A model generated the notes under the pieces. The model ran no database searches, was not told the origin of the DNA, and saw nothing but the letters and a program-made list of their open reading frames with translations. This document shows, one piece after another, positions 38,966 through 63,940 of a stretch of DNA of 64,000 bases. Position 1 is the stretch's first letter. The number at the start of each line of letters is the position of its first letter. A program made the position numbers and the translations under genes. The stretch covers positions 124,001-188,000 of the IMG/VR virus record IMGVR_UViG_3300034101_004588; one strand, given 5' to 3'.

Positions 38966-39730
38966 TCAAACTTCCATTGAAGGTATTGAATGTCCACCCA
39001 TAGGATTGCTTGTCGCTTCCTGTGGTTTTGGAGCACCTGCTACTTCGTATATAGATTTTCTAACACTATCTAAATCTGTAATAAAATAATCTGTTCCGTT
39101 TATATTAATAGCTGCAATACTGTCTATGCTAATAATTCTTGGTTCTATTCCTTTTTCCACTCCTTGATAAGATGCTGAACCTTTAGAAGGAGATTTATAT
39201 TGAGATACTTCATCTTTATTGGTTACTTCAAAGTCTGAAGATGAATTGGGATTTTCTTTATTAGCTTTAACCAACACTGGTGAAAAACTAGCAGATATAG
39301 CAACCGGAAGATACCGTAAATAAATCTGTCCTTCTTTTTGGCGCAAAGAGGTACTACCTTCTACATCATCATAAACACTTTTTTGAGCAACAAAATCTGT
39401 TGTTTTTCCTTCTCTTTCTCTTTGACGATTAACAGCTGCTGTATAATCAAAACCAATTTGTCCATTGACTTGAGATACTTTAGCAAAATATGCTTTACCA
39501 TGTTTTAAACCCGGCAAAACAAATGAAGGAGAAGGTGCTTTGTTGCTAGACTCTCTAGTAACTTGAGTAACACTAAAGAAGTTAGTTCCTTTGTGTTTTT
39601 GTTCTACCTCTTTAATAATATTAATCAATTCTGATTTAGTGATATTACCTTGCTTTTCTGGTGTTGATGATATGCCGTAAGCCATTTCGTTGTATACCCT
39701 TTCTAGTAGTATGTGATCTTTATTTTTCAT
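38966..39730 (-). CDS. hypothetical late protein with KDHILLE leader
   Basis: MKNKDHILLERVYNE; upstream TAAGTA. Confidence 0.6.
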   Translation of the reverse strand: MKNKDHILLERVYNEMAYGISSTPEKQGNITKSELINIIKEVEQKHKGTNFFSVTQVTRESSNKAPSPSFVLPGLKHGKAYFAKVSQVNGQIGFDYTAAVNRQREREGKTTDFVAQKSVYDDVEGSTSLRQKEGQIYLRYLPVAISASFSPVLVKANKENPNSSSDFEVTNKDEVSQYKSPSKGSASYQGVEKGIEPRIISIDSIAAININGTDYFITDLDSVRKSIYEVAGAPKPQEATSNPMGGHSIPSMEV

Positions 39731-48690: not shown

Positions 48691-49968
48691 TTATTGTGCT
48701 CGTTGATCTGCTCTAGCTGCGGATCCCATATCATTTAAAGTGTCGTCTATTAATTTTGCCCAATACTTGTAAGTTTGACTCTTTTTACTATTTTTCATAA
48801 TAGAATCTTCCCATAAAACAGCTTCCCAATTTTCTTTATTTTGTTCTGCTAATTCCATGGCTTGAGCCATTCTTTTGTTAATACTTTCGTAATCTGTGTC
48901 TGCAAATAGATATAACAATTTACGCAATCTTGAATTCATGTCTTCATCTGCTGCATCTGGAGCTCTAACATTAATATATGTATGTTGTAATTCTGCTGGT
49001 AATTCTGTGTAATCTTTTGAATATATCTTTTTTCTAGTATCTATATAAGCTCTTTTTACTCTATAAGATGTAAAGTTTGTAAAATCTGAAGGACCTGCAT
49101 TACGAGTAACTTGATAAATTTGCTCGTCTTCTGTAAGAGGACGATAAACAAATAATTTTTCCAATCCTTTTAACTTTGGTTGCCATTCTTGAGAAATAAC
49201 CATATTCCAATCACCAACTCTTTCACGATTGTTCAACGCATTAGTTAATCTAAATTTACCATCTCTTTGAGCGTGAATAACTATAACGTGGTTGTCATCA
49301 GATACTGGTAAGGTTTCATCATACACAAAATAAACACTGGCACTAGTATCACCGGATCCAAATCTATAACTGTAAAATAAACTTCTTTCTATAGGATAAG
49401 AAATACACCATCCGTAGTATTTGCTGATATCTTTGCTTTCGTTTTTGGCTTCTTCTTCTTTTTCTTTTGATAGAAAACGTTTAAATAAAATACAAGAATT
49501 GGGATCTTTACCAAAATAAACATGAATTCCATTTTTCGGATCTTTGTATATTTCTTCAGCTCCGGTTTCTCCTTCTGCCATTTCAACTTTAGATGCTGCT
49601 TTTTCTGCCGGGTCTCTAAATTGATGGACTATTTTTTCTAGATCAGACCAATTATAAAATTCTACTTGAAGAGGTTGTTTTTTTAAATTTTCAAAACGGC
49701 GAACATCTTTTTGATTTCTTTCATCCGGTTTAATATCTCCACTATCTATATATTGTTGAACTAGTTCTTTAATACGATTAGATGTATTGTTGGCTGTTTT
49801 AAGTTGATCAAATCTTTGTAAGGTTGCTCGAATAGCTGTTTCTTCTACAAATGCTCCTGCTTGTGGTTTTAATCTTTTAATTTGTTGATTGAGAAACCCT
49901 TCACTGTATTCGTTCAAAATAATACCTCCATACACTTGTTCCAATAAAATTTGATCTTTGGTTCTCAT
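48691..49968 (-). CDS. putative internal head protein (KDQILLE leader)
   Basis: MRTKDQILLE; internal WCIS...FYSYR...YFVYD domain. Confidence 0.55.
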   Translation of the reverse strand: MRTKDQILLEQVYGGIILNEYSEGFLNQQIKRLKPQAGAFVEETAIRATLQRFDQLKTANNTSNRIKELVQQYIDSGDIKPDERNQKDVRRFENLKKQPLQVEFYNWSDLEKIVHQFRDPAEKAASKVEMAEGETGAEEIYKDPKNGIHVYFGKDPNSCILFKRFLSKEKEEEAKNESKDISKYYGWCISYPIERSLFYSYRFGSGDTSASVYFVYDETLPVSDDNHVIVIHAQRDGKFRLTNALNNRERVGDWNMVISQEWQPKLKGLEKLFVYRPLTEDEQIYQVTRNAGPSDFTNFTSYRVKRAYIDTRKKIYSKDYTELPAELQHTYINVRAPDAADEDMNSRLRKLLYLFADTDYESINKRMAQAMELAEQNKENWEAVLWEDSIMKNSKKSQTYKYWAKLIDDTLNDMGSAARADQRAQ

Positions 49969-49980
49969 CTATTTTAATAT

Positions 49981-50427
49981 TTACCAGTTTTGTTCATAAT
50001 ATTCTGCTCTGGTTAAAGATGGAGAACCTAATATATTTTCTATTCTTGAAACTACTTCTTCATCATCAATATTACAAGGACCTCCTACATGCCAATTATA
50101 TTCTTCTCTTGGTATGCGTTTTTCTCTATAGACATATATTGTAACTATTAATCCGTCTTCAAACTGTATTACCCATCTAGCTAAAACCTTATCGTCTTCT
50201 GTATAAATTGGTTTACCAAATTTATCTATCAATTGTTTGTGTGTTGTTTTTACGTATCCTTTTAAACAAGTACCAGATATTTCTATATCATTGCTATTAA
50301 TTTTTTTTATCTTATAGCGATTTGAAAAGGATCTCAAAGCTTGAACTTTATTTAAATCTGCTTCTAAAAGAGATGCATAAACATTTTTTAAGGTTTTAAA
50401 TTTTTTGGGTATATTACTTTTATTCAT
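49981..50427 (-). CDS. putative internal head protein
   Basis: SLLEAD...VQALRSF. Confidence 0.5.
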   Translation of the reverse strand: MNKSNIPKKFKTLKNVYASLLEADLNKVQALRSFSNRYKIKKINSNDIEISGTCLKGYVKTTHKQLIDKFGKPIYTEDDKVLARWVIQFEDGLIVTIYVYREKRIPREEYNWHVGGPCNIDDEEVVSRIENILGSPSLTRAEYYEQNW

Positions 50428-50428
50428 A

Positions 50429-50827
50429 TTAATACGAATTCCACATTTTTAACCATTTATCATAATTTGGTTCTATTTTTCCGTCTATTACCAATTCTCT
50501 TAATACCACTTCTGCAACTTTGAAAAGGTGAGAAGTTGGAGGTATTTCTGCATCCAAACTAGTATATTCACTGTCTGAAAATCTTTTTAAACTTATTAAT
50601 TCCATTTCTGGTTCTTCTAGAGCCCACTCAAACGTATACCTTGCTTCGTAATGGTCGTCTTTAGCAATAAAACTTAATATATAAATTTTATTGTCTTTAT
50701 CATAATCTTCGTTTTCTATTATAAAATCCCTGCCAGGTCCTAAGTCTTTATCAAAATCCATAAATTTTTTTAAACCTTGAATCTTATCATATTGAGATTC
50801 TAAAAGTATTTGATCCTTGGTTTTCAT
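50429..50827 (-). CDS. putative internal head protein
   Basis: MKTKDQILLE...IQGLKKF; paralog of the next gene. Confidence 0.55.
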   Translation of the reverse strand: MKTKDQILLESQYDKIQGLKKFMDFDKDLGPGRDFIIENEDYDKDNKIYILSFIAKDDHYEARYTFEWALEEPEMELISLKRFSDSEYTSLDAEIPPTSHLFKVAEVVLRELVIDGKIEPNYDKWLKMWNSY

Positions 50828-50842
50828 TTTTATTATTTAGGT

Positions 50843-51271
50843 TCAATAATCTGGTTTCCAAAAATGAGGCGGTATTTCTGGTTCCAGTTTACCTGCATCT
50901 ACCAAGGCTTCTATCTTTTCTTCTGCGTCTATAAAAAGTTTTGAACCAGGTGTTATTTCTGCTTCTAGATAATCATAATTTTCATCTGCATATCTTTTTA
51001 AACTCAAAAGTTTTATAATATGATCTGGATTCCAACCTTCGTATTTCCACCAAAAATTATATCTTGCTTCATAATAATCATCTTTAGCTTTAAAGGATAC
51101 CACATAAATTTTTGCTTGATAATTCGGAAATTCTGTGTCTTTATATAATATTTGAAAATGAGAAGGGTCTCCTAAATCCGATTCTCTTTCGGCAAACTTT
51201 TTAAGAGCTAAAATTTTATCTGTAGCTTCTCTTAATAATTGTAAATCCTTTTTATTCATGGACCATACCAC
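50843..51271 (-). CDS. putative internal head protein
   Basis: MNKKDLQLLRE...ILALKKF. Confidence 0.55.
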   Translation of the reverse strand: MVWSMNKKDLQLLREATDKILALKKFAERESDLGDPSHFQILYKDTEFPNYQAKIYVVSFKAKDDYYEARYNFWWKYEGWNPDHIIKLLSLKRYADENYDYLEAEITPGSKLFIDAEEKIEALVDAGKLEPEIPPHFWKPDY

Positions 51272-51744
51272 CTAGTTGATGCTGTGAAATAATCTAAAAA
51301 GTCATTGTAATCAGGTTCATTATAAAATGTTGTCAAATAATCATAAGCTTTACTTCCTAATTCTTCTGTTAAATCTTCAGACCAATTTTTTTTAAATTTT
51401 TCATAACCGCCATAATTTTCTAAAGTATCTTTGGTTGCTTTATCGTACAAAGCTTGGTGTAAGAATCCTTCATACTCTTGTTGTATTTCTCGAGAAGACA
51501 AATGGTCATAATAAAAATCTACATTTATTGGATTTAATTCTATATTTCTTTTTACATGGTCTAGATATTCTGGTAAAATAGACATATACAATTCTCTGGG
51601 AACACCCATGGAAGAGTTTTCATATTCGTCTATGGTTAGTTTTTTAACATGATCTAAAACATTAAGCTCTTTATTGGCAAATTGTTTAAACGCTTGTATC
51701 TTGTCGTATTGAGCTTCTAAAAGTATTTGGTCTTTATATTTCAT
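51256..51744 (-). CDS. putative internal head protein
   Basis: MKYKDQILLE...IQAFKQF. Confidence 0.55.
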   Translation of the reverse strand: MKYKDQILLEAQYDKIQAFKQFANKELNVLDHVKKLTIDEYENSSMGVPRELYMSILPEYLDHVKRNIELNPINVDFYYDHLSSREIQQEYEGFLHQALYDKATKDTLENYGGYEKFKKNWSEDLTEELGSKAYDYLTTFYNEPDYNDFLDYFTASTRWYGP

Positions 51745-52085
51745 TAAACAAATAATTCTACAACATCTTTAATATCTGGAATTATCATTTCTATATCATC
51801 TTGGTCTATCTCTTTTCCTTCTTTATCATAAAGAGGAGTTTCTAAATATTTTTGCGAAGATACCCAGTTTCTATAAAAATTATCAAATTCTGGTGTAGAT
51901 AAAAATCCAGCAAATGTTTGTATAGCAGAATTTAATTTATCTATATGTTCATTGTACTTGCTAATCATAAGACCGGCTTCTCGGCGATCTTTTTCATCTT
52001 TAGAAAAAGATTTTAGTCCTTGAATTTTTAGATTAGTTATTTCTTCTGCAGCTTCTTGTAATAATTGTAAATCTTTTTTTGTCAT
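51744..52085 (-). CDS. putative internal head protein
   Basis: MTKKDLQLLQE...IQGLKSF. Confidence 0.55.
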   Translation of the reverse strand: MTKKDLQLLQEAAEEITNLKIQGLKSFSKDEKDRREAGLMISKYNEHIDKLNSAIQTFAGFLSTPEFDNFYRNWVSSQKYLETPLYDKEGKEIDQDDIEMIIPDIKDVVELFV

Positions 52086-52402
52086 AATTGTTCACTTGCA
52101 TAAATGCCTAATTTTTTGTGAGCTTCATCTCTGTTTAAGAAATGCCATTTGTTGTTAGTTGGGTGTATAAAAGCGAATCCTTCTTCAGGTTTTCCTTTAT
52201 CATACCATTTATCGGCTTCTTCATCACTAGGAATACGACCTAATTTTTTAGGAAGATATTCGTCAAATATTTCTCGAAAAACAAAACCATGACCCATGCG
52301 AGTTTTATCATGGAATATTTTTCCGTATACTTTAATAGCGGGGTAAAGCTTAATGCCTCCACGAGCTTCAAAAATCAGACAAATATAATATGTATTAAAC
52401 AT
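52082..52402 (-). CDS. hypothetical late protein
   Basis: upstream TAAATA. Confidence 0.5.
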   Translation of the reverse strand: MFNTYYICLIFEARGGIKLYPAIKVYGKIFHDKTRMGHGFVFREIFDEYLPKKLGRIPSDEEADKWYDKGKPEEGFAFIHPTNNKWHFLNRDEAHKKLGIYASEQL

Positions 52403-52432
52403 ATCATATATTTATAGAAACCAGGTGGTATT

Positions 52433-52951
52433 CTAAAATACTTGCTGCAAAAACTCTGCTACTTCTTTATCTTTAATAGATTGTCCTTCATGCAGAATCT
52501 CACAAACAACCTTATACATATCAAAAGCCTTGCGTTCAAAAAACTTTGTTGCCTCTTCATATCCTAGAGTCTCAATCCAACAATTCATTTGTGGGTATTG
52601 AGGAGCAGCATGGAAGATACATCCATTATGAAAATTACCAATCCAACACAAAAGAAAGATTGCTCCTTTGACACCTTTTTCTTTAACCATGTATTCAAAG
52701 AATACAGCTCGTTCTTCTGGGTCTTTACCTACATACCGATTGAGCTTGGTAATATAAGAACCGTCTAAAAAGATAATCGAACGGCCTTTAGAAAGAACAT
52801 GATCCTTTAAAACGGAAACATTATTATCATTCATATAGACCTTACGAATAGTAGGCCATTTAACATTAACCCCTCTAGAGGAAAAAATAGACGAACCTAT
52901 CAAAGGTTGTCGATTCATTGACACTTTTTTATTTTGACGAAGATCTATCAT
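52433..52951 (-). CDS. hypothetical protein
   Basis: 172-aa ORF. Confidence 0.55.
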   Translation of the reverse strand: MIDLRQNKKVSMNRQPLIGSSIFSSRGVNVKWPTIRKVYMNDNNVSVLKDHVLSKGRSIIFLDGSYITKLNRYVGKDPEERAVFFEYMVKEKGVKGAIFLLCWIGNFHNGCIFHAAPQYPQMNCWIETLGYEEATKFFERKAFDMYKVVCEILHEGQSIKDKEVAEFLQQVF

Positions 52952-53195
52952 GTTTAAAATGATAGATTAAATTGGTGGGAAATACAAGAATATTATTCGG
53001 TTTTATATCTTTCTTTAATCCATTTAGATTTGAATTTTAAAGTCCAGTCGATCAAGGCTCGAGGAAATCCAATATCGTAACCCACTTTTTCTGACTCATA
53101 CCATTTGTGTTTATTGATCTCTTCTTTCATAGCCAAGAATTCTCGGTAAAGGCTAGTTTTTTCTATATTCACTCTATCTATTAATATTTATCATT

Positions 53196-53672
53196 TTAAG
53201 AGGTTATACGAAACGCAAATTCAACACCATCATTAGATTTAACTATTTTAAAACCATTTTGTTTATAAAAAGACATTAAATTTTTATGAGATGATTTGTT
53301 TTGCCCTGAAGAAATTTCTCCCGGAGATAATGCCATAAGGGTTCCTGAGGGATATTGCATGGCTAAAGTATTAATGATCTCTGAACCCCTACCTAATCCT
53401 CTTTGTGTAGAAAGTATTCTTAATAATTGAATCCATATATAGGTAAATTTTTTTGGTAGTTTTAAAGACCTTAGATATTTTGCTACCGGATCATTTTTGG
53501 GATCATCAAAATAAAAAAGATCAATAACCTCAGATATTGTCAGGTTTTCAGCAACGTCCCAATCGAAGTCTGCTATTTTTTTACCATCTTCTCGAACTTC
53601 TTCTCGAGACATATCAAATTCTAAAGACTCTAGAATTTGTTTTATTTTATTATTGAACCGATTCATTTTCAA
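53196..53672 (-). CDS. GNAT acetyltransferase-like protein
   Basis: QRGLGRGSEII (acetyl-CoA loop)...SFYKQNGF. Confidence 0.65.
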   Translation of the reverse strand: MKMNRFNNKIKQILESLEFDMSREEVREDGKKIADFDWDVAENLTISEVIDLFYFDDPKNDPVAKYLRSLKLPKKFTYIWIQLLRILSTQRGLGRGSEIINTLAMQYPSGTLMALSPGEISSGQNKSSHKNLMSFYKQNGFKIVKSNDGVEFAFRITS

Positions 53673-54018
53673 ACCAATAAATCATTCCATTAGGACCTTC
53701 TTCCATTTTTAGGTCATCATGTTTGATTCCTACTTTAGAAAGAAGATTGCCTAATCTTTCTCCAGTCGCTTGAAAATCAAATAAAGAATAATCCGTATTA
53801 AAAATTTGTTTATACATTTCATCTAAATCAGAAAACTTTTCTTGGTTATCATAAATTTTCTTCTTAGAAAAAAGACTATTGCCGAACATTTCTTTCAAAC
53901 GAGAAGCAAAGGTTTCAGACAATTCATCATAAGCTTTCATCTGAACTTTTTTCTGTTCTTTGGCTTGGTTAATTTTACCGTAAGTCTCTTCTAAGAGTAT
54001 TTGATCTTTATTTTTCAT
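53650..54018 (-). CDS. putative internal head protein
   Basis: MKNKDQILLEETYGKI. Confidence 0.55.
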   Translation of the reverse strand: MKNKDQILLEETYGKINQAKEQKKVQMKAYDELSETFASRLKEMFGNSLFSKKKIYDNQEKFSDLDEMYKQIFNTDYSLFDFQATGERLGNLLSKVGIKHDDLKMEEGPNGMIYWFENESVQ

Positions 54019-54022
54019 AAAA

Positions 54023-54274
54023 TTATTCTTTAGATTCTGTATATTTTAGATGTCTTAATATATCTTCAAAGACCTCGACTACATTATTAAAATTACCCCA
54101 ATAACCTAATCCATCTTGATTCTCGGCCTCATCAATATATTCATTAAAAGCTTCCATGACCTTATTTTTAAAACGCCAGAGTTCTTCTTCTTGAAAATCT
54201 TGTAAGGCCTGTAGTTTTGGATTTACAATTTTATCCATTTCCGCTTCCAAGAGTATTTGATCTTTAGATCGCAT
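54023..54274 (-). CDS. putative internal head protein
   Basis: MRSKDQILLE...LQALQDF; upstream TAAATA. Confidence 0.55.
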   Translation of the reverse strand: MRSKDQILLEAEMDKIVNPKLQALQDFQEEELWRFKNKVMEAFNEYIDEAENQDGLGYWGNFNNVVEVFEDILRHLKYTESKE

Positions 54275-54988
54275 ATTATTCTATTTACCCAACTTTTAAA
54301 GAGAATTCTCTTTATTACTCTTTATAATAAGAGTATGGCTTATATCAATACCGATATTCCTTTATTCTCTTGTCTGCTAGATACTAGCTTTCTTTATGAT
54401 AAAGACCCAAGAACCACCCAAGAATATCTTAAAGTAGAGGTCTTTGGATTTACTTCTCTTAATCGAAGATGCGGTCTCTTCTCGGTTATGTCAGAAATGG
54501 GTAGTGTTCATACTCGAGTACCTCTTCATTACCTTATAGCCGAGGACACGGATAATCCCTCTCATTACCCGCTCGACTGGTTGCAACTTTGGGATTCCTA
54601 TTCTCCTTATGTGCAATGTATAAGATATGAGTACCTCAAAAACCTCACTTGTAAGATCTGCCTGAAAGATAGGAACTATGAGTCGGCTCGCTATCTCATG
54701 ACCTTTGATTGGTGCTATGGACCGGAATTCACCACCGGACAAAGTGAAAATCCGGGAGGTCATAAACAAGGACATCTACTAAAGGGCGATCACGGACAAT
54801 ACTATATACAACCGGGTAATAGAATAATCTGGAGAGACGGAGGAGCCTGGATTGGTAAAGAATTACAAGGGCATGAAAAATGGAAAGTCTTTTCTAAAGA
54901 GTTCTCTTGTGAACAAACAGGTTCTCGATGGTTTGCCGGAGAAGAAGAATTACACTTCTACCAATTTGAAAAGAATAAAGACAGGTGA
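54257..54988 (+). CDS. phage hypothetical protein (start probably MAYINTD, 54334)
   Basis: LQLWDSY...YLMTFDW...HKQGH...QPGNR. Confidence 0.6.
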   Translation: MIFRSHIILFTQLLKRILFITLYNKSMAYINTDIPLFSCLLDTSFLYDKDPRTTQEYLKVEVFGFTSLNRRCGLFSVMSEMGSVHTRVPLHYLIAEDTDNPSHYPLDWLQLWDSYSPYVQCIRYEYLKNLTCKICLKDRNYESARYLMTFDWCYGPEFTTGQSENPGGHKQGHLLKGDHGQYYIQPGNRIIWRDGGAWIGKELQGHEKWKVFSKEFSCEQTGSRWFAGEEELHFYQFEKNKDR

Positions 54989-55121
54989 TATAAAGATAAA
55001 GGGGTACCTATATAAAGGGGTAGGTACCGGGATTGCCCCGAGACCCGGGTATCGATTATTCTCGTCTATTATTGTTTTTGAACTGCCGGGGTCCTAGGAT
55101 ACCGCCCGTTGTCGTATTAAC

Positions 55122-55150
55122 TTGCTTTTCCCTAGAATCCGATTTATAAT
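55122..55150 (+). promoter_or_regulatory. sigma70-type promoter facing into the early block
   Basis: TTGCTT-17 bp (TTCCC...)-TATAAT. Confidence 0.6.
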
Positions 55151-55198
55151 TCCGCGCCTAGGGTTTCTTGGTCAAGGGGTTCGAACCCAGGTGACCTT

Positions 55199-55498
55199 CT
55201 ACAGCTCGTACCCTTCAGACTCTTTCTTAGACTGGTGTTGATCCACGTGCCTGGCTAGCCGGCGAAGCTCTTGGCGGCACATCTCCTTAGCTTCTTCATT
55301 AGCCGAGGACTCCAGAACCGTCATACAGATATTCACCGCCTCTTCCCAAGAAGGGGTTAGGTCAATGACTCGACGATTGGTGTTGGCAGGAAGAGCTTGG
55401 AAGGCTTCGGCCATCTCTTCATTAGCTTCGGACTCGGTGACATAGACTTCTTCACATTGCACTTGAGTGTTGAAGTCATCGGTGTAGTTCTTATTCAT
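55199..55498 (-). CDS. early hypothetical protein
   Basis: own promoter at 55509-55537. Confidence 0.6.
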   Translation of the reverse strand: MNKNYTDDFNTQVQCEEVYVTESEANEEMAEAFQALPANTNRRVIDLTPSWEEAVNICMTVLESSANEEAKEMCRQELRRLARHVDQHQSKKESEGYEL

Positions 55499-55646
55499 AA
55501 CAGTTATTAGTGTAGAGACTATTTGGGGGAAACACCAGACTTTCTTTTTATTCTCTCAAAGTAATTTTAACGATGAAAGTAATCCTGCCTTTGTATTATT
55601 TTATACCGTTGTATTAAATTGCGGACTGCTATGAGAGATAAAAGAA

Positions 55647-55680
55647 CCCTCCAGCTTCCTATTACGGAAGCTGGAGGGGG
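55647..55680 (-). terminator. intrinsic terminator
   Basis: CCCTCCAGCTTCC-TATTAC-GGAAGCTGGAGGG with a flanking A run. Confidence 0.7.
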
Positions 55681-55722
55681 TTTCGTTGACACGGGTTCCT
55701 CTACTCAGAGGACCGAGAGTGT

Positions 55723-56088
55723 TTACTTCTTCCGCTTCTTCTTAGCGGCTTTCTTGACCGGAGCCTCTTCAACCGCAACTGTCACCATCTCCTCTTCAAT
55801 CTTAGCCTCGACCGCTTCTTTGACCTTAGGGTCAGCGGCGATGACTTCGAACTTGGGCTTGGAGACTTTGGCCGAGGAGACTTTCTCTTCGGTGTACTCT
55901 ACGCCGATCCCGAGGAAGGATCCTTTGCCGTTGGAGGCGGTGATCCGACGAAGCGCTCCGAAGACGGGACGATACTCGGCGGTGATGTTGTATTCGCTAG
56001 CGAGAGTGTCGATAACGAACTTCGGGGTGACCGTTTCATTCTTCATCAGAATGTCGCGGATGGCTTTGCTCATTGGGTTCTTTTCCAT
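55723..56088 (-). CDS. early hypothetical protein with K/A-rich tail
   Basis: C-terminal APVKKAAKKKRKK. Confidence 0.55.
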   Translation of the reverse strand: MEKNPMSKAIRDILMKNETVTPKFVIDTLASEYNITAEYRPVFGALRRITASNGKGSFLGIGVEYTEEKVSSAKVSKPKFEVIAADPKVKEAVEAKIEEEMVTVAVEEAPVKKAAKKKRKK

Positions 56089-56180
56089 ATTTTTATTTTA
56101 TTGGTTGTTTCTCTTGAGAGGTGGTCTCTCTTGATTGTTTATATCTTAAAGGTTTTTCTCGGGACTGGCAACCGGGTTTT

Positions 56181-56372
56181 TTAAATTTCGAAAGCCTTGG
56201 CATACCCCGACACTCGCGGCGAGAAGCAACGATCTTCGTTGATGATGCCATTGAGGTCATGTCCGATAGTGGAGACTATCGCCGCGTACTTCTCCTTAGA
56301 GCTGTACGTGGGGTGGTTGTGAACAAACCTGACATAAGCCAGGAGGTCTTTGAGGAAGGTTTTATCTTTCAT
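56181..56372 (-). CDS. early hypothetical protein (start MKDKTF)
   Basis: promoter immediately upstream. Confidence 0.5.
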   Translation of the reverse strand: MKDKTFLKDLLAYVRFVHNHPTYSSKEKYAAIVSTIGHDLNGIINEDRCFSPRVSGYAKAFEI

Positions 56373-56410
56373 AGTCTTTATTATGGAGGAAATAAGGGGG
56401 AAGAGCCACC

Positions 56411-56614
56411 TCAAATCTCCTTCAGATGTTTGGGTTTCTTGAGAGAGAAGTTCTTGGGTTTCTTCTTGAGGACATTGAGGTAGTCCAAAGTATCGTCAAT
56501 CAATTGATAGATAGCTTTTATCTCCTCGGCTTTGGCTTTGGGGTCTTCTAGCATGTTGGCTAGACACTGCAAAGCCTCTTGGACTCGTTGGATCTCTTTC
56601 TCGATGCGATTCAT
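56411..56614 (-). CDS. early hypothetical protein
   Basis: helical ORF. Confidence 0.5.
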   Translation of the reverse strand: MNRIEKEIQRVQEALQCLANMLEDPKAKAEEIKAIYQLIDDTLDYLNVLKKKPKNFSLKKPKHLKEI

Positions 56615-56754
56615 TTAAAAGGAATAAGGGTTACCTGTCGAAGGGGGATGACTGGGTAGTACGTAATAGGTGGATACTCTTTCGTAGTAGCCATTGACTA
56701 TCTTGACAAAGCAGCCTAAGACAAAGAGACTGAAGAGGAGTGCAAGAGAGTATT

Positions 56755-57030
56755 TCATTGATGGAGAAAATCCCAGGCAGAATTAGGAATCTCTTCGCGC
56801 ACCGCGGTGTCCAGGCTATCCGCCAGGTCCCGAGCTTCTTTAACCCGATTCTGCTCCAGCAGATGCCCAATGCAAAAGAGGTCAGCGGCATCGGTATAGG
56901 AGATGAGGAGATTGGCTCGATACTCTTTAACATTTTCTTTCTCCCAGGCCGTCTGCCAGTACTCGAGATACTTTGTAGAAGCCTCTTTGACGATGTTAGC
57001 CGCGGAGATGTGGGTGAGTTTTATTTTCAT
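56755..57030 (-). CDS. early hypothetical protein
   Basis: promoter repeat immediately upstream. Confidence 0.55.
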   Translation of the reverse strand: MKIKLTHISAANIVKEASTKYLEYWQTAWEKENVKEYRANLLISYTDAADLFCIGHLLEQNRVKEARDLADSLDTAVREEIPNSAWDFLHQ

Positions 57031-57063
57031 CAAACACTAGTGTAGGGGTTATTCGGGGGAATC

Positions 57064-57381
57064 TCAAGCCAATTCTCTAACCACTTTTAGGTAACTAGCT
57101 AGGATCCAGGTACCTCCTTGGATGGCAGGTCTCTTGTACTCTTGATAGTTAGTAACTTCTACCTCACACCAGACTCTCTTCTCTCCACTGCGAAGCTCTG
57201 TCTTAAGATGATCCGCCTTAGGTTCCACCGCACAATGCCAACCTGGACGATAGGCAAAGCCTTTGGTGGCATGACACTCGGCCGGCATCCATTGTCCGAA
57301 AGGTACTACTTGAGTGCGATTGATAAAGAGAGGACCAAGAGTTCCGTCTTTACGTTTGCGAAAGAGTTTGTAGGCTTTCAT
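57064..57381 (-). CDS. phage hypothetical protein
   Basis: AYKLFRKRKDGTLGPLFIN...KGFAYRPGWH...QGGTW. Confidence 0.65.
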   Translation of the reverse strand: MKAYKLFRKRKDGTLGPLFINRTQVVPFGQWMPAECHATKGFAYRPGWHCAVEPKADHLKTELRSGEKRVWCEVEVTNYQEYKRPAIQGGTWILASYLKVVRELA

Positions 57382-57384
57382 GGT

Positions 57385-57645
57385 TTAGGCGTCAAGTTTA
57401 AATGCGGTCATGATACGGTTGTACCAAATAGGGTTCTTGTCTTTGAGGATATCCAGGGGGGCTTTGCCATCGTGGTACTCCTCAAAGTATTCCTCTGGGG
57501 TGTGGTTGGCGATAAGCTCTTTGCGGAACTTAGCCATCGTGAACGGGCTGCCCGAGTACTTGAAACGAGCAACGAACTGGCGGTTGGGTCCGAAGAGCAG
57601 GTACTGCCCTTCCTTCTTGAGATTGTCTTTGGTGAACTTATTCAT
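57385..57645 (-). CDS. early hypothetical protein (start corrected)
   Basis: VARFKY...EEYF...APLDIL; the track's N-terminal extension is promoter DNA. Confidence 0.6.
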   Translation of the reverse strand: MNKFTKDNLKKEGQYLLFGPNRQFVARFKYSGSPFTMAKFRKELIANHTPEEYFEEYHDGKAPLDILKDKNPIWYNRIMTAFKLDA

Positions 57646-57687
57646 AACAAATACTAGTGTAGGGGTTATTCGGGGGAAACTCAACCC

Positions 57688-57903
57688 TTATTTGATCCTC
57701 TTGACTTTGAGAGCTGTCGGCTCGATATCACGGTCTCCGAACTCGGATCCGAAAGCATAGAAGCTGCCATGATAACCGTTCCACTCTTGAATGAAATTGA
57801 AAAGCTGGGTTTGGAAGGCTTTCATGGAGGTGCTGTCCAGCTGTTCTCCTTTAAGAGTATTGAGGTTGAAGCTGATTTCGAATTTGAAGGTGTTCTTATT
57901 CAT
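57688..57903 (-). CDS. early hypothetical protein (start corrected)
   Basis: MNKNT start 10 nt after the -10 box. Confidence 0.5.
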   Translation of the reverse strand: MNKNTFKFEISFNLNTLKGEQLDSTSMKAFQTQLFNFIQEWNGYHGSFYAFGSEFGDRDIEPTALKVKRIK

Positions 57904-57923
57904 AACAAATACTAGTGTAGGGG

Positions 57924-58184
57924 TTATTCGGGGGAAACACAAGTCAAAACATCGTCTTCGGAAAGGGCATTGTAATCCAACCAGCCAAAGAGTTCCTGCT
58001 TACGAGCTACGGAGATATAAGAATAGTCTTTTACTTTCTCTCCATAGAAGCCACAGATGAAGCCGGCATGATCTAAAGCATCTTGCAAAGAAGAATGGGT
58101 TCTTACTTTAAGATGGGTAATGAGGTTGTGAACCTCAAAGCCGCGATCGCTTTTGTAGATCTTGACTACTTGGGACTCTTTCAT
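57924..58184 (-). CDS. early hypothetical protein
   Basis: own promoter. Confidence 0.5.
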   Translation of the reverse strand: MKESQVVKIYKSDRGFEVHNLITHLKVRTHSSLQDALDHAGFICGFYGEKVKDYSYISVARKQELFGWLDYNALSEDDVLTCVSPE

Positions 58185-58212
58185 GATCCCTAGTGTATAT
58201 CAGATTAGGGGG

Positions 58213-58434
58213 TCAGGCCAGACTGAAAAAGTCACTAGAAACCTTTTTAACATTGTCTGTCTCTGGGTAAAACCAAACTGTGAAGGACATCGGTTGAGAT
58301 TCCTCTTCTTCGGTTTTCAGATAGACAGCACAAGACCAAACATCTCCATCAATGTTCCAGGCTTCTACTTCCAAGACCTCAGCTCCAAAGTTGTACGCTT
58401 CTAGAGCCACATTAACTTTCTCTTCTCTATTCAT
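58213..58434 (-). CDS. early hypothetical protein
   Basis: packed ORF. Confidence 0.5.
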   Translation of the reverse strand: MNREEKVNVALEAYNFGAEVLEVEAWNIDGDVWSCAVYLKTEEEESQPMSFTVWFYPETDNVKKVSSDFFSLA

Positions 58435-58679
58435 ATCAGAACTCCATTCTCCTGGAGGTATTGCTGTCTTTCAACGGATGACAGATGCTTTTGTAATTTG
58501 ACATTGTCCTTAGAGCTTACATCTTTGAAGATGACCCCGTCTATATTCCATCGACTCTCATAGACCTCAAAGAGATGCAGCAGGAACTTCTGATGATGCC
58601 TGGCCAGGAAGTCATGGTCCTGTCGATTGATAAAGAAACTATCTACAGAAGAGACTACAGCACTCTGATAGGTCTTCAT
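58431..58679 (-). CDS. early hypothetical protein
   Basis: packed ORF. Confidence 0.5.
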   Translation of the reverse strand: MKTYQSAVVSSVDSFFINRQDHDFLARHHQKFLLHLFEVYESRWNIDGVIFKDVSSKDNVKLQKHLSSVERQQYLQENGVLI

Positions 58680-58936
58680 AGAACAGAATCCTCTAGAATG
58701 TTTTCTTCATAGCATTCTTGGAACGACCCGTATTCTGAAAACATATGATAGAGTTCGTGGTTGATATCCGAGGTACCTACTTCTTCTGCTCCGGCATTAA
58801 CCAGACGACGAGCGGCTAGACGACGAAGAAAAGGTTTAATGAGGTCCTCCGTATTACGATAGGCCTGCATGGCCTCTTCAAAGGTGGGTTTAGTAGCTTC
58901 CATGATAGTGGTAACGATGAAGACGGTCTTGGGCAA
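58676..58936 (-). CDS. early hypothetical protein
   Basis: packed ORF. Confidence 0.5.
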   Translation of the reverse strand: MPKTVFIVTTIMEATKPTFEEAMQAYRNTEDLIKPFLRRLAARRLVNAGAEEVGTSDINHELYHMFSEYGSFQECYEENILEDSVL

Positions 58937-59090
58937 TCAAACGATCGATCCATCCACTTTGATTGAACCAGGTGATGTTATGAGTCAGGAGACTAGGTTT
59001 CGGCTTACGGTAACGCCGGCTGATAACTTCAAAGAGCCTATGGAGTTTGTTTTTCATCGTCTGTAAGTGTAGATGGTATTAGGGGGAAGT

Positions 59091-59420
59091 TCAAGCCTCG
59101 ATTTTCACATCAACGAAGATGTCCTCTTTGAATGACCAGAGAATATCTTTGAGGCGAAAGCCAGGAGAACATCCACAGCTGCAGCCACACTTCTGAGACC
59201 AGGAAGGTTTAACGGTCTTGATCTGATCTTCTGTGAACCCTAGTCGCCGAAGGATAGTCGGGATCTGTTTCTTGAATTCCAGATGAGGACGGCTACGGCG
59301 ATTGACTAGATTCTCCATCACAGACTCTCCGGTGAGGAAGAAGTACATATGAGGAGATGTCCGACGACGATCGTAACCGTTCATCGGTTGTTTGGTGATT
59401 CCTTCAATGGTTATTTTCAT
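59091..59420 (-). CDS. early hypothetical protein
   Basis: WSQKCGCSCGCSPGF motif; own promoter. Confidence 0.6.
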   Translation of the reverse strand: MKITIEGITKQPMNGYDRRRTSPHMYFFLTGESVMENLVNRRSRPHLEFKKQIPTILRRLGFTEDQIKTVKPSWSQKCGCSCGCSPGFRLKDILWSFKEDIFVDVKIEA

Positions 59421-59466
59421 CGTTTATAAGTGTAGAGGAAATTCGGGGGAAACACAAGGAAAAAAA

Positions 59467-59498
59467 GAGGGGGTCCCAGCCGCACTAGGACCCCCTCA
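59467..59498 (-). terminator. intrinsic terminator
   Basis: GAGGGGGTCC/GGACCCCCTC stem with a U run on the minus strand. Confidence 0.75.
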
Positions 59499-59511
59499 AC
59501 CACACCCACAA

Positions 59512-59880
59512 TTACCAGGTAATGTCAACACCTAAGCGCCGCATCATCTTTTGCATACGCTTCAAGAAGGCTTCCTTGTCGTCTTCGGTGACCGAGACCG
59601 GCCGAGACCAGGTGGGGGCCATATCTTTGTAGATATAGGTCCTAGGATGAACGTTACGAATACACGTAACGTAGTTACGATTACCAGAGCCTTTACGATA
59701 CGACAGACAGACTCCTTTACGTTTAATGGTACGGTTCAAAGAACCAACCATGCGACGAACCTCAGCAGACTCGTTACCGAGGATTCGAATAGTATCACCT
59801 GGCTCCATGCTATGAAGAAGTTCGGCGAGTTGTGGATTGGCCGGCCTGCGACCACTGTTTTTGAGGTATGATTTATTCAT
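59512..59880 (-). CDS. early hypothetical protein
   Basis: MNKS start. Confidence 0.5.
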   Translation of the reverse strand: MNKSYLKNSGRRPANPQLAELLHSMEPGDTIRILGNESAEVRRMVGSLNRTIKRKGVCLSYRKGSGNRNYVTCIRNVHPRTYIYKDMAPTWSRPVSVTEDDKEAFLKRMQKMMRRLGVDITW

Positions 59881-59919
59881 CAGGATAAGGTTAAAGGATT
59901 TTATCGGGAATTGCCCGCT

Positions 59920-60168
59920 TTATTTTAGAGGAAGTTCTGGGTGGTCAATAACAATCTTGTCAATCTTTTTATTGAGGTCTTGTAGTTTAGTAATCAAACT
60001 ACGCAGACCCTTTTTATTGACCGACACTATCTGAGAGGTGTTCTCATAAAAGAACTCCAGAGTAACGACTGCCTCTGAGGATATCGGGGTTGAGAAACCT
60101 TTGTATTTAACTTTCTTTTCCAAAGTAGCTTTGACTTTGGCACTGACGGCATTGAAACATTCTTTCAT
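59920..60168 (-). CDS. early hypothetical protein
   Basis: own promoter. Confidence 0.5.
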   Translation of the reverse strand: MKECFNAVSAKVKATLEKKVKYKGFSTPISSEAVVTLEFFYENTSQIVSVNKKGLRSLITKLQDLNKKIDKIVIDHPELPLK

Positions 60169-60215
60169 AGTCTATAGAATAAAAGGGTTTAGGGGGAAAG
60201 GCAACAACATTAAGA

Positions 60216-60290
60216 TGGCACCTAGGGTAGGATTCGAACCTACAACCGAGCGGTTAACAGCCGCTAGCTCTACCATTGAGCTACCTAGGT
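60216..60290 (-). tRNA. tRNA-Asn(GTT)
   Basis: AGCGG-CTGTTAA-CCGCT, CCA. Confidence 0.93.
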
Positions 60291-60296
60291 GTGACT

Positions 60297-60368
60297 TGGA
60301 ACGATTGGGACTCGAACCCAAAACCAATACCTTAAAAGGGTACTGCTCTACCATTGAGCTACCGTTCC
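60297..60368 (-). tRNA. tRNA-Lys(TTT)
   Basis: GTACC-CTTTTAA-GGTAT. Confidence 0.92.
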
Positions 60369-60379
60369 GCAGCATAAAT

Positions 60380-60625: not shown

Positions 60626-60684
60626 CCTTTATCTTAAAGAGCCATTCCGGGAAAGACAAGAAGAAAATTGGGGTAACTTTAGCC

Positions 60685-60713
60685 TTGGCTTTCCCCCTTA
60701 AATGCCTTACAAT
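60685..60713 (+). promoter_or_regulatory. divergent sigma70-type promoter
   Basis: TTGGCT-TTCCCCCTTAAATGCCT-TACAAT. Confidence 0.65.
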
Positions 60714-61052: not shown

Positions 61053-61071
61053 GATTGGGAGGAAAGGATTA

Positions 61072-61731: not shown

Positions 61732-61769
61732 CTTGTTTGGTGATCAGCTTCTTGACATTCCGATCCAAA

Positions 61770-63024: not shown

Positions 63025-63360
63025 TTAATCTGTATCTTTAATGAACTTCATAAGCTGTCTACCCCAATCAAAGAGGTTTTCCGGAAATTCTTTAATAGTT
63101 TTCATACTATAGTAAAGATTAAATTCTTCAGGGGTCTTTCCAGGTTTATTTTGTAATTGTTCTAAGACGTCTTCAATCCTTTGATTAATTTCTTCTTCTT
63201 GACCTATCAAGACCTTTTCTATATCTAATATAAGCCCAAAAACCTGATTGATCTTACGGGAGAGCTCCATTATATCTTTTTCTTTATTAGCAAATTCTTT
63301 AAAGGCATCAACCTTATTTTGCACCTGATTATAGGCTTCGGATAAACTTTTATTATTCAT
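63025..63360 (-). CDS. putative internal head protein
   Basis: SLSEAYNQVQNKVDAFKEFANKE. Confidence 0.5.
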   Translation of the reverse strand: MNNKSLSEAYNQVQNKVDAFKEFANKEKDIMELSRKINQVFGLILDIEKVLIGQEEEINQRIEDVLEQLQNKPGKTPEEFNLYYSMKTIKEFPENLFDWGRQLMKFIKDTD

Positions 63361-63940
63361 TGGTCCATTTATCTATCTTTCTTAACATTTCGGAGAGTTT
63401 ATGAATTCCTTGGAAGTCATCTCCTAAAATACTATATTCATTTTCTGATCCCCAATGAGCCTTACGATAGGCAGGGGGCATATGGTTTAGATTAAATCCT
63501 AGGTCTTTGGCATTAGGAGCCCATAAGAGAAATTCTACTTCATTTTTAAGTAAGCGAGCCAGGATCTCTACTATAACATAAGCCTTATAGGTTCCTTCTA
63601 AACCAAAGATATGAAAGTCTCTTTTTTGATTCATTTCAAATTTATAGTTAGTATCTTGAGGGGTAGGTTTTAAAGGATCGGTATATATCAATAAAGGTTT
63701 AGCAGTTGCTCGATTAGGAATTTCCCAGGCCCATACATCATCGAAACCGGACTCTTGAGTAATTTCATCGTTCTCGGTTATATATTTGTGGGGTCCCAAT
63801 ACTCTTTCTAGATCGGCAATGGAAGCTTTAATGGTCAATTCATTTTTATATTGGTCTTTAATTTCTTGTTTAAAGAAATTTTTAAAGCCTTGAGCCTTAA
63901 CATTAGATAAGGTTTCTTCTACAAGTTGATTAAATTTCAT
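63353..63940 (-). CDS. putative internal head protein
   Basis: MKFNQLVEE...AQGFKNF; upstream TAAATA. Confidence 0.5.
   Translation of the reverse strand: MKFNQLVEETLSNVKAQGFKNFFKQEIKDQYKNELTIKASIADLERVLGPHKYITENDEITQESGFDDVWAWEIPNRATAKPLLIYTDPLKPTPQDTNYKFEMNQKRDFHIFGLEGTYKAYVIVEILARLLKNEVEFLLWAPNAKDLGFNLNHMPPAYRKAHWGSENEYSILGDDFQGIHKLSEMLRKIDKWTNE

What the first reader, a model, noticed from the sequence alone, without database searches (positions are those of the whole stretch)
48691..54274. Cassette of late proteins with a shared bipartite N-terminal leader fused to unrelated payloads (putative capsid-targeting signal)
Seen: six ORFs start M-[KR]-x-K-D-[QH]-I-L-L-E (48691, 50429, 51256, 53650, 54023, and 38966 outside the cluster) and two start M-x-K-K-D-L-Q-L-L-x-E (50843, 51744). 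About 5-12 residues later a second motif recurs: IQGLKKF, ILALKKF, IQAFKQF, IQGLKSF, LQALQDF, VQALRSF, VDAFKEF (63025), AQGFKNF (63353). Sequences then diverge, except for the 50429/50843 pair. Several have TAA(A/G)TA upstream. Established: T4 internal proteins IPI-III carry a roughly 10-aa capsid-targeting sequence removed by prohead protease gp21 after L/I-x-E, are injected with the DNA, and IPI* inhibits GmrSD restriction. Inference: this is a much larger modular locus of packaged and injected effectors, probably counter-defence or host-takeover proteins, with a second motif of unknown role that would remain on the mature protein.
Basis: partly seen in the sequence, partly recalled or inferred. 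Interest (0 to 1): 0.8.

Follow-up and report, generated by a model that had tools for sequence, protein, structure and literature searches.

The report
Shared capsid-targeting-like leaders on phage proteins
An uncultured T4-like lake phage has about twenty genes that fuse the same short N-terminal leader, ending in a head-protease-type cleavage site, to unrelated proteins; this looks like an enlarged version of phage T4's system for loading proteins into its capsid, with an added second motif whose role is unknown.

Summary
All ORFs lie on the minus strand of a 211-kb, about 99%-complete T4-like phage genome from lake water. Six window ORFs start M-[KR]-x-K-D-[QH]-I-L-L-E (0 expected in shuffles). 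Two start M-x-K-K-D-L-Q-L-L-x-E. The second motif, K-[ILV]-x-[GA]-[LF]-[KRQ]-x-F, occurs 23 times in the genome, all within 24 kb, including at internal domain junctions beyond the window.

The genome encodes a gp21-type prohead protease, a scaffold-like protein and gp23. The leader has the format of T4 propeptides: 10 residues ending hydrophobic-x-Glu (compare T4 gp24 MAKINELLRE). TAAATA late-promoter-like sites sit 5-10 nt before several cassette genes, as before gp21 and gp22.

The same leader heads 89 distinct proteins in 53 unrelated payload clusters on 94 IMG/VR stretches from related phages. Codons vary, so selection acts on the peptide.

Best reading: capsid-targeting propeptides cleaved by the prohead protease, so that the cargo is packaged. 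This is a new variant of a known kind. Packaging, cleavage and injection are untested. Most payloads are acidic and of unknown function, unlike the basic T4 internal proteins. Motif 2 is restricted to one sublineage, always follows a hydrophobic-x-Glu site, and its role is open.

The parts
54023..54274 (-). 83-aa ORF. Leader M-R-S-K-D-Q-I-L-L-E, then motif 2 (K-L-Q-A-L-Q-D-F) 10 residues later.
54282..54287 (-). TAAATA late-promoter-like site, 7 nt upstream of the ATG at 54274.
   Evidence: the same motif and spacing occur before gp21 and gp22
53650..54018 (-). 122-aa ORF. Leader M-K-N-K-D-Q-I-L-L-E. No clear motif 2 (K-I-N-Q-A-K-E-Q at that position).
   Evidence: (best leader-HMM hit in the genome, 33.4 bits)
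53196..53666 (-). 156-aa ORF with a possible degenerate leader (K-I-K-Q-I-L-E). Low confidence; the leader HMM does not detect it.
   Evidence: no Pfam or PHROG assignment
52082..53172 (-). Three ORFs without leader or motif 2 (52993-53172, 52433-52951, 52082-52402), interleaved in the cassette. TATAAATA at 52407-52414 precedes the last one.
51744..52085 (-). 113-aa ORF. Leader variant M-T-K-K-D-L-Q-L-L-Q-E, then motif 2 (K-I-Q-G-L-K-S-F). Its ATG overlaps the upstream stop codon.
51256..51744 (-). 162-aa ORF. Leader M-K-Y-K-D-Q-I-L-L-E, then motif 2 (K-I-Q-A-F-K-Q-F). Acidic payload (pI 4.7).
50843..51259 (-). 138-aa ORF counted from the ATG at 51259. Leader variant M-N-K-K-D-L-Q-L-L-R-E, then motif 2 (K-I-L-A-L-K-K-F). 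Paralogue of 50429-50827.
   Evidence: (47% identity over 102 aa)
50429..50827 (-). 132-aa ORF. Leader M-K-T-K-D-Q-I-L-L-E, then motif 2 (K-I-Q-G-L-K-K-F). TAAATA at 50834-50839.
49981..50427 (-). 148-aa ORF. It has a longer N-terminus with S-L-L-E at residues 18-21, motif 2 (K-V-Q-A-L-R-S-F) at residues 27-34, then an alpha/beta domain of 'family A' (FGxP...WxIxFxDG).
   Evidence: AlphaFold2 mean pLDDT 87.5 with one helix over residues 8-36, then the domain; domain-only homologues of about 100 aa in other phages
48691..49968 (-). 425-aa ORF with the full two-site leader of the relatives (M-R-T-K-D-Q-I-L-L-E-Q-V-Y-G-G-I-I-L-N-E). No motif 2. TAAATA at 49978-49983.
38966..39730 (-). 254-aa ORF outside the cluster. 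Leader M-K-N-K-D-H-I-L-L-E-R-V-Y. No motif 2.
63025..63360 (-). 111-aa ORF. L-S-E at residues 6-8, motif 2 (K-V-D-A-F-K-E-F) at residues 16-23.
63353..63940 (-). 195-aa ORF. M-K-F-N-Q-L-V-E-E, then the relaxed motif-2 variant K-A-Q-G-F-K-N-F, which the strict regex misses. TAAATA at 63949-63954. It begins the second, larger block of motif-2 genes, which runs past the window end to genome position 197584.

Best explanation
The cassette encodes proteins that carry capsid-targeting-type propeptides.

Proposed mechanism:
1. The genes are transcribed late from T4-type TAAATA promoters, in short and tightly coupled operons.
2. Each product starts with a 10-11-residue leader: M-[KR]-x-K-D-Q-I-L-L-E, or M-x-K-K-D-L-Q-L-L-x-E.
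3. The leader forms the start of an amphipathic helix. This helix docks the protein onto the prohead scaffolding core.
4. The leader ends in hydrophobic-x-Glu, the site type cut by gp21-family prohead proteases.
5. After the shell closes, the phage's gp21 homologue removes the leader. The mature protein stays in the head with the DNA and, by analogy with T4's internal proteins and Alt, is delivered into the next host cell.

Shown here: the leaders, their strictly N-terminal position, their fusion to unrelated payloads, peptide-level selection, the protease, scaffold-like and gp23 genes, and the promoter-like sites.

Inferred: docking, cleavage, packaging and ejection. Most weakly inferred: that the cargo acts in counter-defence or host takeover.

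Motif 2 (K-hydrophobic-x-[GA]-[LF]-K-x-F) is a second, lineage-restricted helical module. It always lies a few residues downstream of a hydrophobic-x-Glu site. It recurs at flexible junctions inside multi-domain proteins. My working model is that it marks the new N-terminus after cleavage, so the multi-domain proteins would be cut into single domains. It may also lengthen the docking helix. Its actual role is unknown.
For: - The genome is T4-like. Prohead protease PF03420, E=2e-29. It is 34% identical to T4 gp21 with GELNHP and GVSSR retained, and has L-V-E near its own N-terminus, like T4's L-I-E. Scaffold-like and gp23 genes lie adjacent.
- The leader format matches T4 propeptides read from the T4 record: gp24 MAKINELLRE and Alt MELITE. 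The T4 CTS is MKTYQEFIAE (PMC8442874). In T4, propeptides are 10-19 residues, residues 8 and 10 govern processing, and residues 4 and 7 govern targeting (PMC9026906).
- The leader is strictly N-terminal: 8 of 8 real ORFs in this genome, and all 7 K-D-Q-I-L-L-E copies in five large relatives.
- In relatives it heads 120 complete ORFs. These comprise 89 distinct proteins in 53 payload clusters, with invariant M1, K4, D5, Q6, I7, L9 and E10.
- Payloads in relatives include PolyA_pol+HD (E=6e-24), GNATs, GP88 and a weak PARP-like match.
- All five large relatives encode the protease and share 70-84% gp23 identity with this genome.
- Codons vary at every leader position.
- TAAATA lies 5-13 nt before the ATG in 38 of 87 relatives' leader genes, and within 30 nt in 7 of 17 leader or motif-2 genes here, against 16-22% of other genes. 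It has the same placement before gp21 and gp22.
- The cassette adjoins virion structural genes.
- Motif 2: hydrophobic-x-Glu precedes about 20 of 23 copies here by my reading of the listing, and 10 of 11 internal copies in homologues. E137, K139 and K144 are invariant in alignment A4. The junction has pLDDT below 50, between two confident helices.
Against: - There is no virion proteomics, no cultured relative and no RNA data. No RNA run was listed, and there was no match among GenBank phages.
- Most payloads are acidic (pI 4.5-5.6). T4's abundant internal proteins are basic.
- About twenty different cargo genes, roughly 12% of the genome, far exceeds T4's handful.
- One leader-bearing payload in a relative is a tRNA nucleotidyltransferase-like enzyme. 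Packaging of such an enzyme has no precedent that I know of.
- The T4 gp23 maturation site does not align with a Glu in this phage's gp23. The protease's specificity is therefore assumed, not shown.
- TAAATA is a short AT-rich word in a 31%-GC genome, and gp23 itself lacks it.
Confidence: 0.6

Rival explanations
1. The leader is an uncleaved N-terminal amphipathic docking or oligomerisation helix. It would bring many different phage proteins to a common intracellular hub, either a host complex or a phage factory component, rather than into the capsid.
For: - The leader plus downstream residues are predicted as one continuous helix (residues 8-36).
- Conservation in relatives extends to about residue 20, with Y13 in 83 of 86 leaders. 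That is more than a cleavage site needs.
- The payloads are acidic and enzyme-like: CCA-adding-type, GNAT and PARP-like. Such proteins would work well in the cytoplasm.
Against: - The Glu at position 10, with a hydrophobic residue at position 8, is invariant. A second hydrophobic-x-Glu follows at about positions 17-20. This is the signature of T4 propeptides.
- The leader co-occurs with the gp21-type protease in every large relative tested.
- The upstream sites are late-promoter-like, and the cassette neighbours structural genes.
Confidence: 0.2
2. The genes form a paralogous family made by tandem duplication, in which only the N-terminus has stayed recognisable. On this view the shared N-terminus is inherited and is not a portable signal.
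For: - Tandem arrangement.
- The 50429/50843 pair is 47% identical.
- 11 motif-2 segments share one domain family.
- Multi-domain ORFs look like fused tandem copies.
Against: - There are 53 payload clusters with no detectable similarity, and several have different Pfam folds: PolyA_pol+HD, GNAT, GP88 and DUF5661.
- Family-A domain homologues in other phages are about 100 aa and lack the N-terminal 35-40 residues. This holds for about 130 of the top 150 representatives. The N-terminus has therefore been added to pre-existing domains.
- Homologous payloads carry different leader types.
Confidence: 0.1
3. The conserved element works at the nucleotide level. It would be a translation-initiation or mRNA element, or a recombination sequence for cassette shuffling, and the peptide would be incidental.
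For: - The 5' coding region is A/T-rich and sits directly after a promoter-like site.
- Contigs from other lake samples match only across the leader at 53981-54026 and then diverge on both sides.
Against: - Synonymous codons vary freely while the amino acids are invariant. Leu9, for example, uses TTG, TTA, CTG, CTA, CTC and CTT.
- No stretch of 31 nt is shared between copies, by my comparison of the copies listed.
- The pattern is explained equally well by cross-mapping of other leader genes.
Confidence: 0.05

Closest known systems
[quoted passage not shown]
   Same: - T4-like phage with a gp21 homologue.
- N-terminal leader of 10-20 residues that ends hydrophobic-x-Glu.
- Glu at position 10 and a hydrophobic residue at position 8, as in MKTYQEFIAE and MAKINELLRE.
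- The same leader on unrelated mature proteins. In the T-even phages this is described as a diverse set of defence proteins that share only a conserved CTS (PMC3012670).
- Late-type promoter words upstream.
- One payload family in relatives is weakly ADP-ribosyltransferase-like, as Alt is.
   Different: - The leader sequence itself differs (K-D-Q-I-L-L-E).
- About twenty cargo genes here, against a handful in T4.
- The payloads are mostly acidic rather than basic.
- No payload is homologous to IPI, IPII, IPIII or Alt.
- A second conserved motif lies after the cleavage-type site.
- The site-plus-motif module recurs inside multi-domain proteins.
- No experimental evidence of packaging exists here.
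Ejection-protein paralogue families of giant phages (phiKZ, 201phi2-1, SPN3US), processed by a gp21-related protease
   Same: - Many head-internal proteins, including paralogue families that share identical N-termini.
- Propeptides with additional internal cleavage motifs (PMC5694885).
- A protease of the same family.
   Different: - Those proteases cut after S/A/G-x-E, and the propeptides are often longer than 100 residues. Here the sites are L/I/V-x-E and the leaders are 10-20 residues.
- No sequence relationship was found.
Phage P1 DarB N-terminal capsid targeting signal (the Dar anti-restriction system)
   Same: An N-terminal signal (the first 30 residues are sufficient) loads an anti-restriction protein into the capsid for delivery (PMC9024508).
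   Different: P1 has no separate scaffold system of the T4 type. There is no shared leader across many genes and no sequence similarity. Homology was not examined here.
Encapsulin cargo-loading peptides and bacterial microcompartment encapsulation peptides (recalled from memory, as an analogy only)
   Same: A short amphipathic peptide at a protein terminus is reused on unrelated cargo to load a protein shell.
   Different: These are cellular systems. Their peptides are usually not cleaved, and there is no homology. Nothing about them was tested here.

Membership tests
T4-type CTS-bearing head-internal proteins | Encoded by a phage that has a gp21-family (Peptidase_S77) prohead protease and a scaffolding core | tested here: met
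   PF03420, E=2e-29, at genome 13115-13786. 34% identity to T4 gp21 with GELNHP and GVSSR conserved. The scaffold-like gene and gp23 are adjacent.
T4-type CTS-bearing head-internal proteins | N-terminal propeptide of about 10-20 residues that ends in (L/I)-x-E | tested here: met
   I-L-L-E at residues 7-10 in six ORFs, and L-L-x-E at residues 8-11 in two. Relatives add a second site near residues 17-20. T4 comparators were read from the T4 record.
T4-type CTS-bearing head-internal proteins | The same leader fused to unrelated mature proteins | tested here: met
   53 payload clusters among 89 distinct leader proteins. Different Pfam domains are present. Within the window only one pair is similar.
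T4-type CTS-bearing head-internal proteins | Late transcription | tested here: inconclusive
   TAAATA or TATAAATA lies 6-9 nt before several ATGs, as before gp21 and gp22. It is enriched, at 41% against 16-22%. No RNA run was listed.
T4-type CTS-bearing head-internal proteins | Protein present in the virion with the leader removed, and ejected with the DNA | not testable with these tools
   There is no cultured relative and no proteomic data.
[quoted passage not shown] | Small, highly basic mature protein, or sequence homology to the IPs | tested here: not met
   Most mature parts have pI 4.5-5.6. No Pfam or PHROG family was found for any window payload.
Giant-phage (phiKZ-like) ejection proteins | Cleavage motif S/A/G-x-E and long propeptides | tested here: not met
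   The sites here are L/I/V-x-E and the leaders are 10-20 residues. The motif definition comes from PMC5694885.
Polyprotein processed by the prohead protease (proposed for the multi-domain motif-2 proteins) | Conserved protease-type sites in exposed linkers between domains | tested here: inconclusive
   Hydrophobic-x-E lies 0-3 residues before 10 of 11 internal motif-2 copies. E137 is invariant. The junction has pLDDT below 50. Cleavage itself was not tested.

The most novel reading that the evidence does not exclude
A lineage of freshwater T4-like phages may have turned the capsid-targeting system into a large, two-part protein-delivery code.

Part one is an interchangeable cleavable address: the K-D-Q-I-L-L-E type or the M-N-F-K-x-Y-hydrophobic-x-E type.

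Part two is a retained tag, N-N-K-L-x-A-L-K-x-F, that becomes the new N-terminus after cleavage.

Multi-domain 'polyproteins' would be cut inside the head into separate tagged domains. The retained tag would then have a second job, for example ordering the cargo in the head, ordering its exit, or addressing it to a target in the host cell.
Probability: 0.2. Interest if true: 0.8.

Novelty: new variant of a known kind. Interest (0 to 1): 0.6.

Why it matters
If the leaders are capsid-targeting propeptides, a 10-residue tag identifies the packaged cargo of a whole clade of uncultured lake phages directly from sequence. The present sample alone holds 53 payload families, most with no known function. 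These are obvious candidates for proteins that act in the first seconds of infection, such as counter-defence factors, host-modifying enzymes or tRNA repair enzymes.

It would also show that T4's cargo-loading principle is conserved at 35% capsid-protein identity and can be scaled up to about 12% of a genome.

The second motif and the conserved junctions inside multi-domain proteins would be a new feature of head maturation. The leaders themselves are candidate tags for engineered protein packaging.

Tried and rejected
- Word-indexed protein search with residues 1-40 of the 132-aa protein returned only the query. A 10-residue leader cannot reach significance against 5.8 billion sequences.
- tblastn of a 24-residue leader against GenBank phages gave no match. 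Megablast of the cassette gave no match either.
- A strict back-translated pattern for E-N-[ND]-K-L-x-[GA]-L-K-x-F found nothing in IMG/VR. In metagenome contigs it gave 31 single hits that look like chance. This first suggested that motif 2 was unique to this genome. The profile search corrected that: 19 of the top 150 family-A representatives carry it, and so does a Logan contig with 13 consecutive such genes.
- A mistyped pattern gave an empty result and was rerun correctly.
- Pfam, PHROGs and ESM Atlas searches on window payloads gave no function.
- Foldseek against the PDB with the family-A model found nothing significant. BFVD gave only uncharacterised phage proteins.
- My guess that 53196-53666 is a GNAT was not supported by Pfam.
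- The PARP-like call for one relatives' payload stays weak: Pfam E=1e-4, below the gathering cut-off, and PDB profile E about 0.2.
- The sigma-70-type promoter scan was at chance level.
- No RNA run was listed.
- Laying DNA contigs showed the phage in other lakes. The break points at the leader are ambiguous, because they may be cross-mapping of other leader genes.
- Clamp-binding or PIP-box readings of motif 2 were considered and dropped, because the spacing does not fit. This judgement is from memory of those motifs and was not tested.

Full report
**Where the window lies.** The window is bases 124001-188000 of a single 210,956-bp virus record, estimated 99% complete. The record encodes three adjacent head genes on the plus strand: a Peptidase_S77 (gp21-type) prohead protease at genome 13115-13786, a scaffold-like protein at 14029-14916, and a Gp23-family major capsid protein at 14979-16442. 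The capsid protein is only about 35% identical to those of cultured cyanophages, its best matches among GenBank phages. The phage is therefore a distant, uncultured T4-like phage. Near-identical DNA is held by at least nine lake-water metagenome runs from 2020-2025. GC content is about 30%, and the window carries 19 tRNA genes.

**The observation.**
- A degenerate pattern for ATG-x-x-K-D-[QH]-I-L-L-E matches six times in the window and never in 100 shuffles.
- In the six-frame translation of the whole genome the core K-D-x-[IQ]-L-L occurs nine times. Eight of these lie directly behind the start codon of a real ORF.
- Two further ORFs start M-x-K-K-D-L-Q-L-L-x-E.
That ATG overlaps the upstream stop as ATGA.
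- The second motif is also real: 8 pattern hits against 0.51 expected.
- Codons differ freely between copies, so the peptide is what is conserved.

**The locus is much larger than reported.** The regex K-[ILV]-x-[GA]-[LF]-[KRQ]-x-F finds 23 copies in the genome. All are on the minus strand between genome 174349 and 197512. The same regex finds one copy in 809 kb of related loci. Beyond the window end lies a second block of about fifteen genes.
- Three genes start with the K-D-L-Q variant of leader 1.
- Four genes start with a different leader: M-N-F-K-x-Y-[LI]-x-E-N-[ND]-K, or M-K-T-F-L-K-Y-Y-T-E-N-K. The latter has aromatic residues at positions 4 and 7, a hydrophobic residue at 8 and Glu at 10, the same pattern as the T4 CTS MKTYQEFIAE (sequence from PMC8442874).
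- Several ORFs hold internal copies of motif 2. One 718-aa ORF has five, and each is followed by a domain of about 140 residues.
- Eleven of the 25 motif-2 segments share one domain family, FGxP...WxIxFxDG, which I call family A. Two more form the 50429/50843 pair. The other twelve are unrelated at the thresholds used.

**Relatives.** Scanning IMG/VR for ATG-[KR]-x-K-D-Q-I-L-L-E gave 94 stretches. They hold 120 complete ORFs of 67-774 aa that start with the leader. These are 89 distinct proteins, which fall into 53 clusters once the first 23 residues are removed.
- Invariant positions are M1, K4, D5, Q6, I7, L9 and E10. L8 and Y13 are nearly invariant.
- The relatives' consensus continues x-[LAI]-Y-x-x-[IV]-[LI]-x-[EK]-[EKN]. 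The leader is therefore about 20 residues with two hydrophobic-x-Glu sites. The window's 425-aa protein has this full form.
- Some contigs hold seven or more leader genes in a row (L024 and L040).
- Five large records of 143-217 kb were tested. All encode the protease and share 70-84% gp23 identity with this genome, but each has only one or two exact copies of the leader.
- Recognisable payloads are a PolyA_pol head domain plus HD domain (E=6e-24), two GNAT acetyltransferases, GP88 and DUF5661. A PARP-like match is weak: Pfam E=1e-4, below the cut-off, and PDB profile hits to PARP15 at E about 0.2. Most payloads have no family.
- No paper in the searched library contains the leader sequence.

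**Why a capsid-targeting propeptide is the best reading.**
- In T4, internal proteins, Alt and gp24 carry N-terminal propeptides of 10-20 residues. These give affinity for the scaffolding core and are removed by gp21 after (L/I)-x-E. In the IPIII CTS, residues 4 and 7 matter for targeting and residues 8 and 10 for processing. The CTS is the only conserved part of an otherwise very diverse set of internal proteins (PMC9026906, PMC3012670, PMC5694885).
- The T4 record gives gp24 as MAKINELLRE, Alt as MELITE, and gp21 as starting with ...L-L-I-E.
- The leaders here have the same length, the same Glu at position 10 and the same hydrophobic residue at 8. One variant even ends L-L-R-E, like gp24.
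- This phage's protease keeps the GELNHP and GVSSR motifs of T4 gp21. From memory, these hold the catalytic His and Ser. It also has L-V-E near its own N-terminus.
- TAAATA, the core of the T4 late promoter TATAAATA, lies 6-16 nt before the start codons of gp21, gp22 and other structural-module genes.
- The same word lies 6-9 nt before the cassette ATGs at 54274, 50827, 49968 and 63940. A full TATAAATA precedes the ORF at 52402.
- TAAATA occurs within 30 nt upstream of 41% of leader or motif-2 genes, against 16-22% of other genes. In relatives it precedes 38 of 87 leader genes.
- The other cassette genes overlap or abut their neighbours, which suggests short operons.
- On one side the cassette adjoins genes that match virion structural protein families.

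**What weakens it.**
- Nothing here shows packaging, cleavage or ejection. No RNA run was listed and no cultured relative exists.
- Most mature parts are acidic, with pI 4.5-5.6. T4's abundant internal proteins are basic.
- T4's CTS does load acidic foreign proteins, so acidity argues against a DNA-neutralising role, not against packaging.
- The T4 gp23 maturation site aligns with a stretch of this gp23 that has no Glu. A candidate I-E-E site lies 17 residues upstream. The protease's specificity is therefore inferred.
- A CCA-adding-type enzyme with the leader is not an obvious capsid cargo.

**Motif 2.** It is not the general second half of leader 1, because relatives with leader 1 lack it.
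- A profile of family A found 516 proteins. Only 19 of the 150 best representatives carry motif 2. The rest are proteins of about 100 residues that begin just before the domain. This agrees with the structure-based Atlas hits to residues 38-140.
- A Logan contig (L134) from a relative has 13 consecutive genes that start M-[NK]-F-x-x-hydrophobic-hydrophobic-x-E-N-D-K-[LF]-x-[AG]-[LF]-K-x-F. It also has internal copies.
- A hydrophobic-x-Glu site lies within a few residues upstream of nearly every copy: about 20 of 23 here by my reading of the listing, and 10 of 11 internal copies in homologues.
- In the alignment of two-domain homologues the invariant columns are that Glu and the two Lys of the motif.
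- AlphaFold2 places the leader site and motif 2 of the 148-aa window protein in one helix (residues 8-36), ahead of a confident alpha/beta domain (mean pLDDT 87.5).
- In the 283-aa two-domain protein the leader is disordered. The junction I-S-E-S has pLDDT below 50, between the last helix of domain 1 and the motif-2 helix of domain 2.
- This fits processing at internal junctions, with motif 2 as the new N-terminus. It fits equally a capped helix that simply begins each module. I hold the processing model at about one in three.

**Rivals.** An uncleaved docking helix for a cytoplasmic hub is the main alternative (0.2). Simple paralogy is contradicted by the different folds behind the leader and by domain homologues that lack it. 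A nucleotide-level element is contradicted by free synonymous variation. Chance is excluded.

**Verdict.** This is a real and extensive feature. It is best explained as an expanded, diverged version of the T4 capsid-targeting system, that is, a new variant of a known kind. Two aspects are new: a lineage-restricted second motif, and conserved site-plus-motif junctions inside multi-domain proteins. The functions of the cargo are unknown.

Noticed in passing
window 54300-62000: GC content jumps to 42-46%, against about 30% elsewhere. The stretch is packed with small minus-strand ORFs and splits the motif-bearing region in two. Several of its ORFs have counterparts after the cassette on the related contig L134, so it is not a recent insertion unique to this genome.
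   Followed up: partly
genome-wide, for example window 50834-50839, 52407-52414 and 54282-54287; genome 13095-13115: The late-promoter-like word TAAATA most often ends only 5-7 nt before the ATG. If transcription starts a few bases after it, as in T4, many late mRNAs would be nearly leaderless. gp23 instead has a GGAGG ribosome-binding site and no TAAATA.
   Followed up: partly
L102:7126-9282 (genome 193126-195282, minus strand): A 718-aa ORF made of five tandem family-A domains, each headed by motif 2. It starts M-N-N-F-K-L-K-A-L-K-D-F, with no cleavable leader. A 467-aa homologue (P0002) has the same start.
   Followed up: partly
window 54368-54988 (+): This ORF matches PHROG 3704, annotated 'ferredoxin' in the auxiliary-metabolic or host-takeover category (E=2.5e-34), but it has no Pfam hit. 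It lies on the opposite strand, directly next to the cassette.
   Followed up: no
window 39752-40855 (-): A metallophosphoesterase-like protein with an N-terminal DNA-binding-like segment (PHROG 221, E=2e-30). It lies immediately upstream of the isolated leader gene 38966-39730.
   Followed up: no
window 52995-53002, and 48692/54012: Contigs from two other lake samples (X2, X3) follow the window up to 52995 and then continue into unlike sequence. One contig in X4 joins 48692 to 54012 with 7 other letters between them, which would skip the whole cassette. Either could be a real population variant or a mapping artefact.
   Followed up: no
window 23809-23898 (-): The predicted tRNA-Ile (anticodon TAT) is 90 nt long, which is unusually long for this type. 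It may hold an intron or be a miscall.
   Followed up: no
L024:5377-6909 (-), on a related IMG/VR contig: A 511-aa tRNA nucleotidyltransferase-like protein (PolyA_pol head domain plus HD domain) carries the K-D-Q-I-L-L-E leader. If the leader means packaging, this would be an unusual capsid cargo.
   Followed up: partly
genome 123795 (window -205), minus strand: A weak internal match to the second half of the relatives' leader (L-Y-N-K-I-L-K-E-D-N) at residue 92 of an ORF just upstream of the window. The leader-HMM E-value is about 1, so it is probably chance.
   Followed up: no
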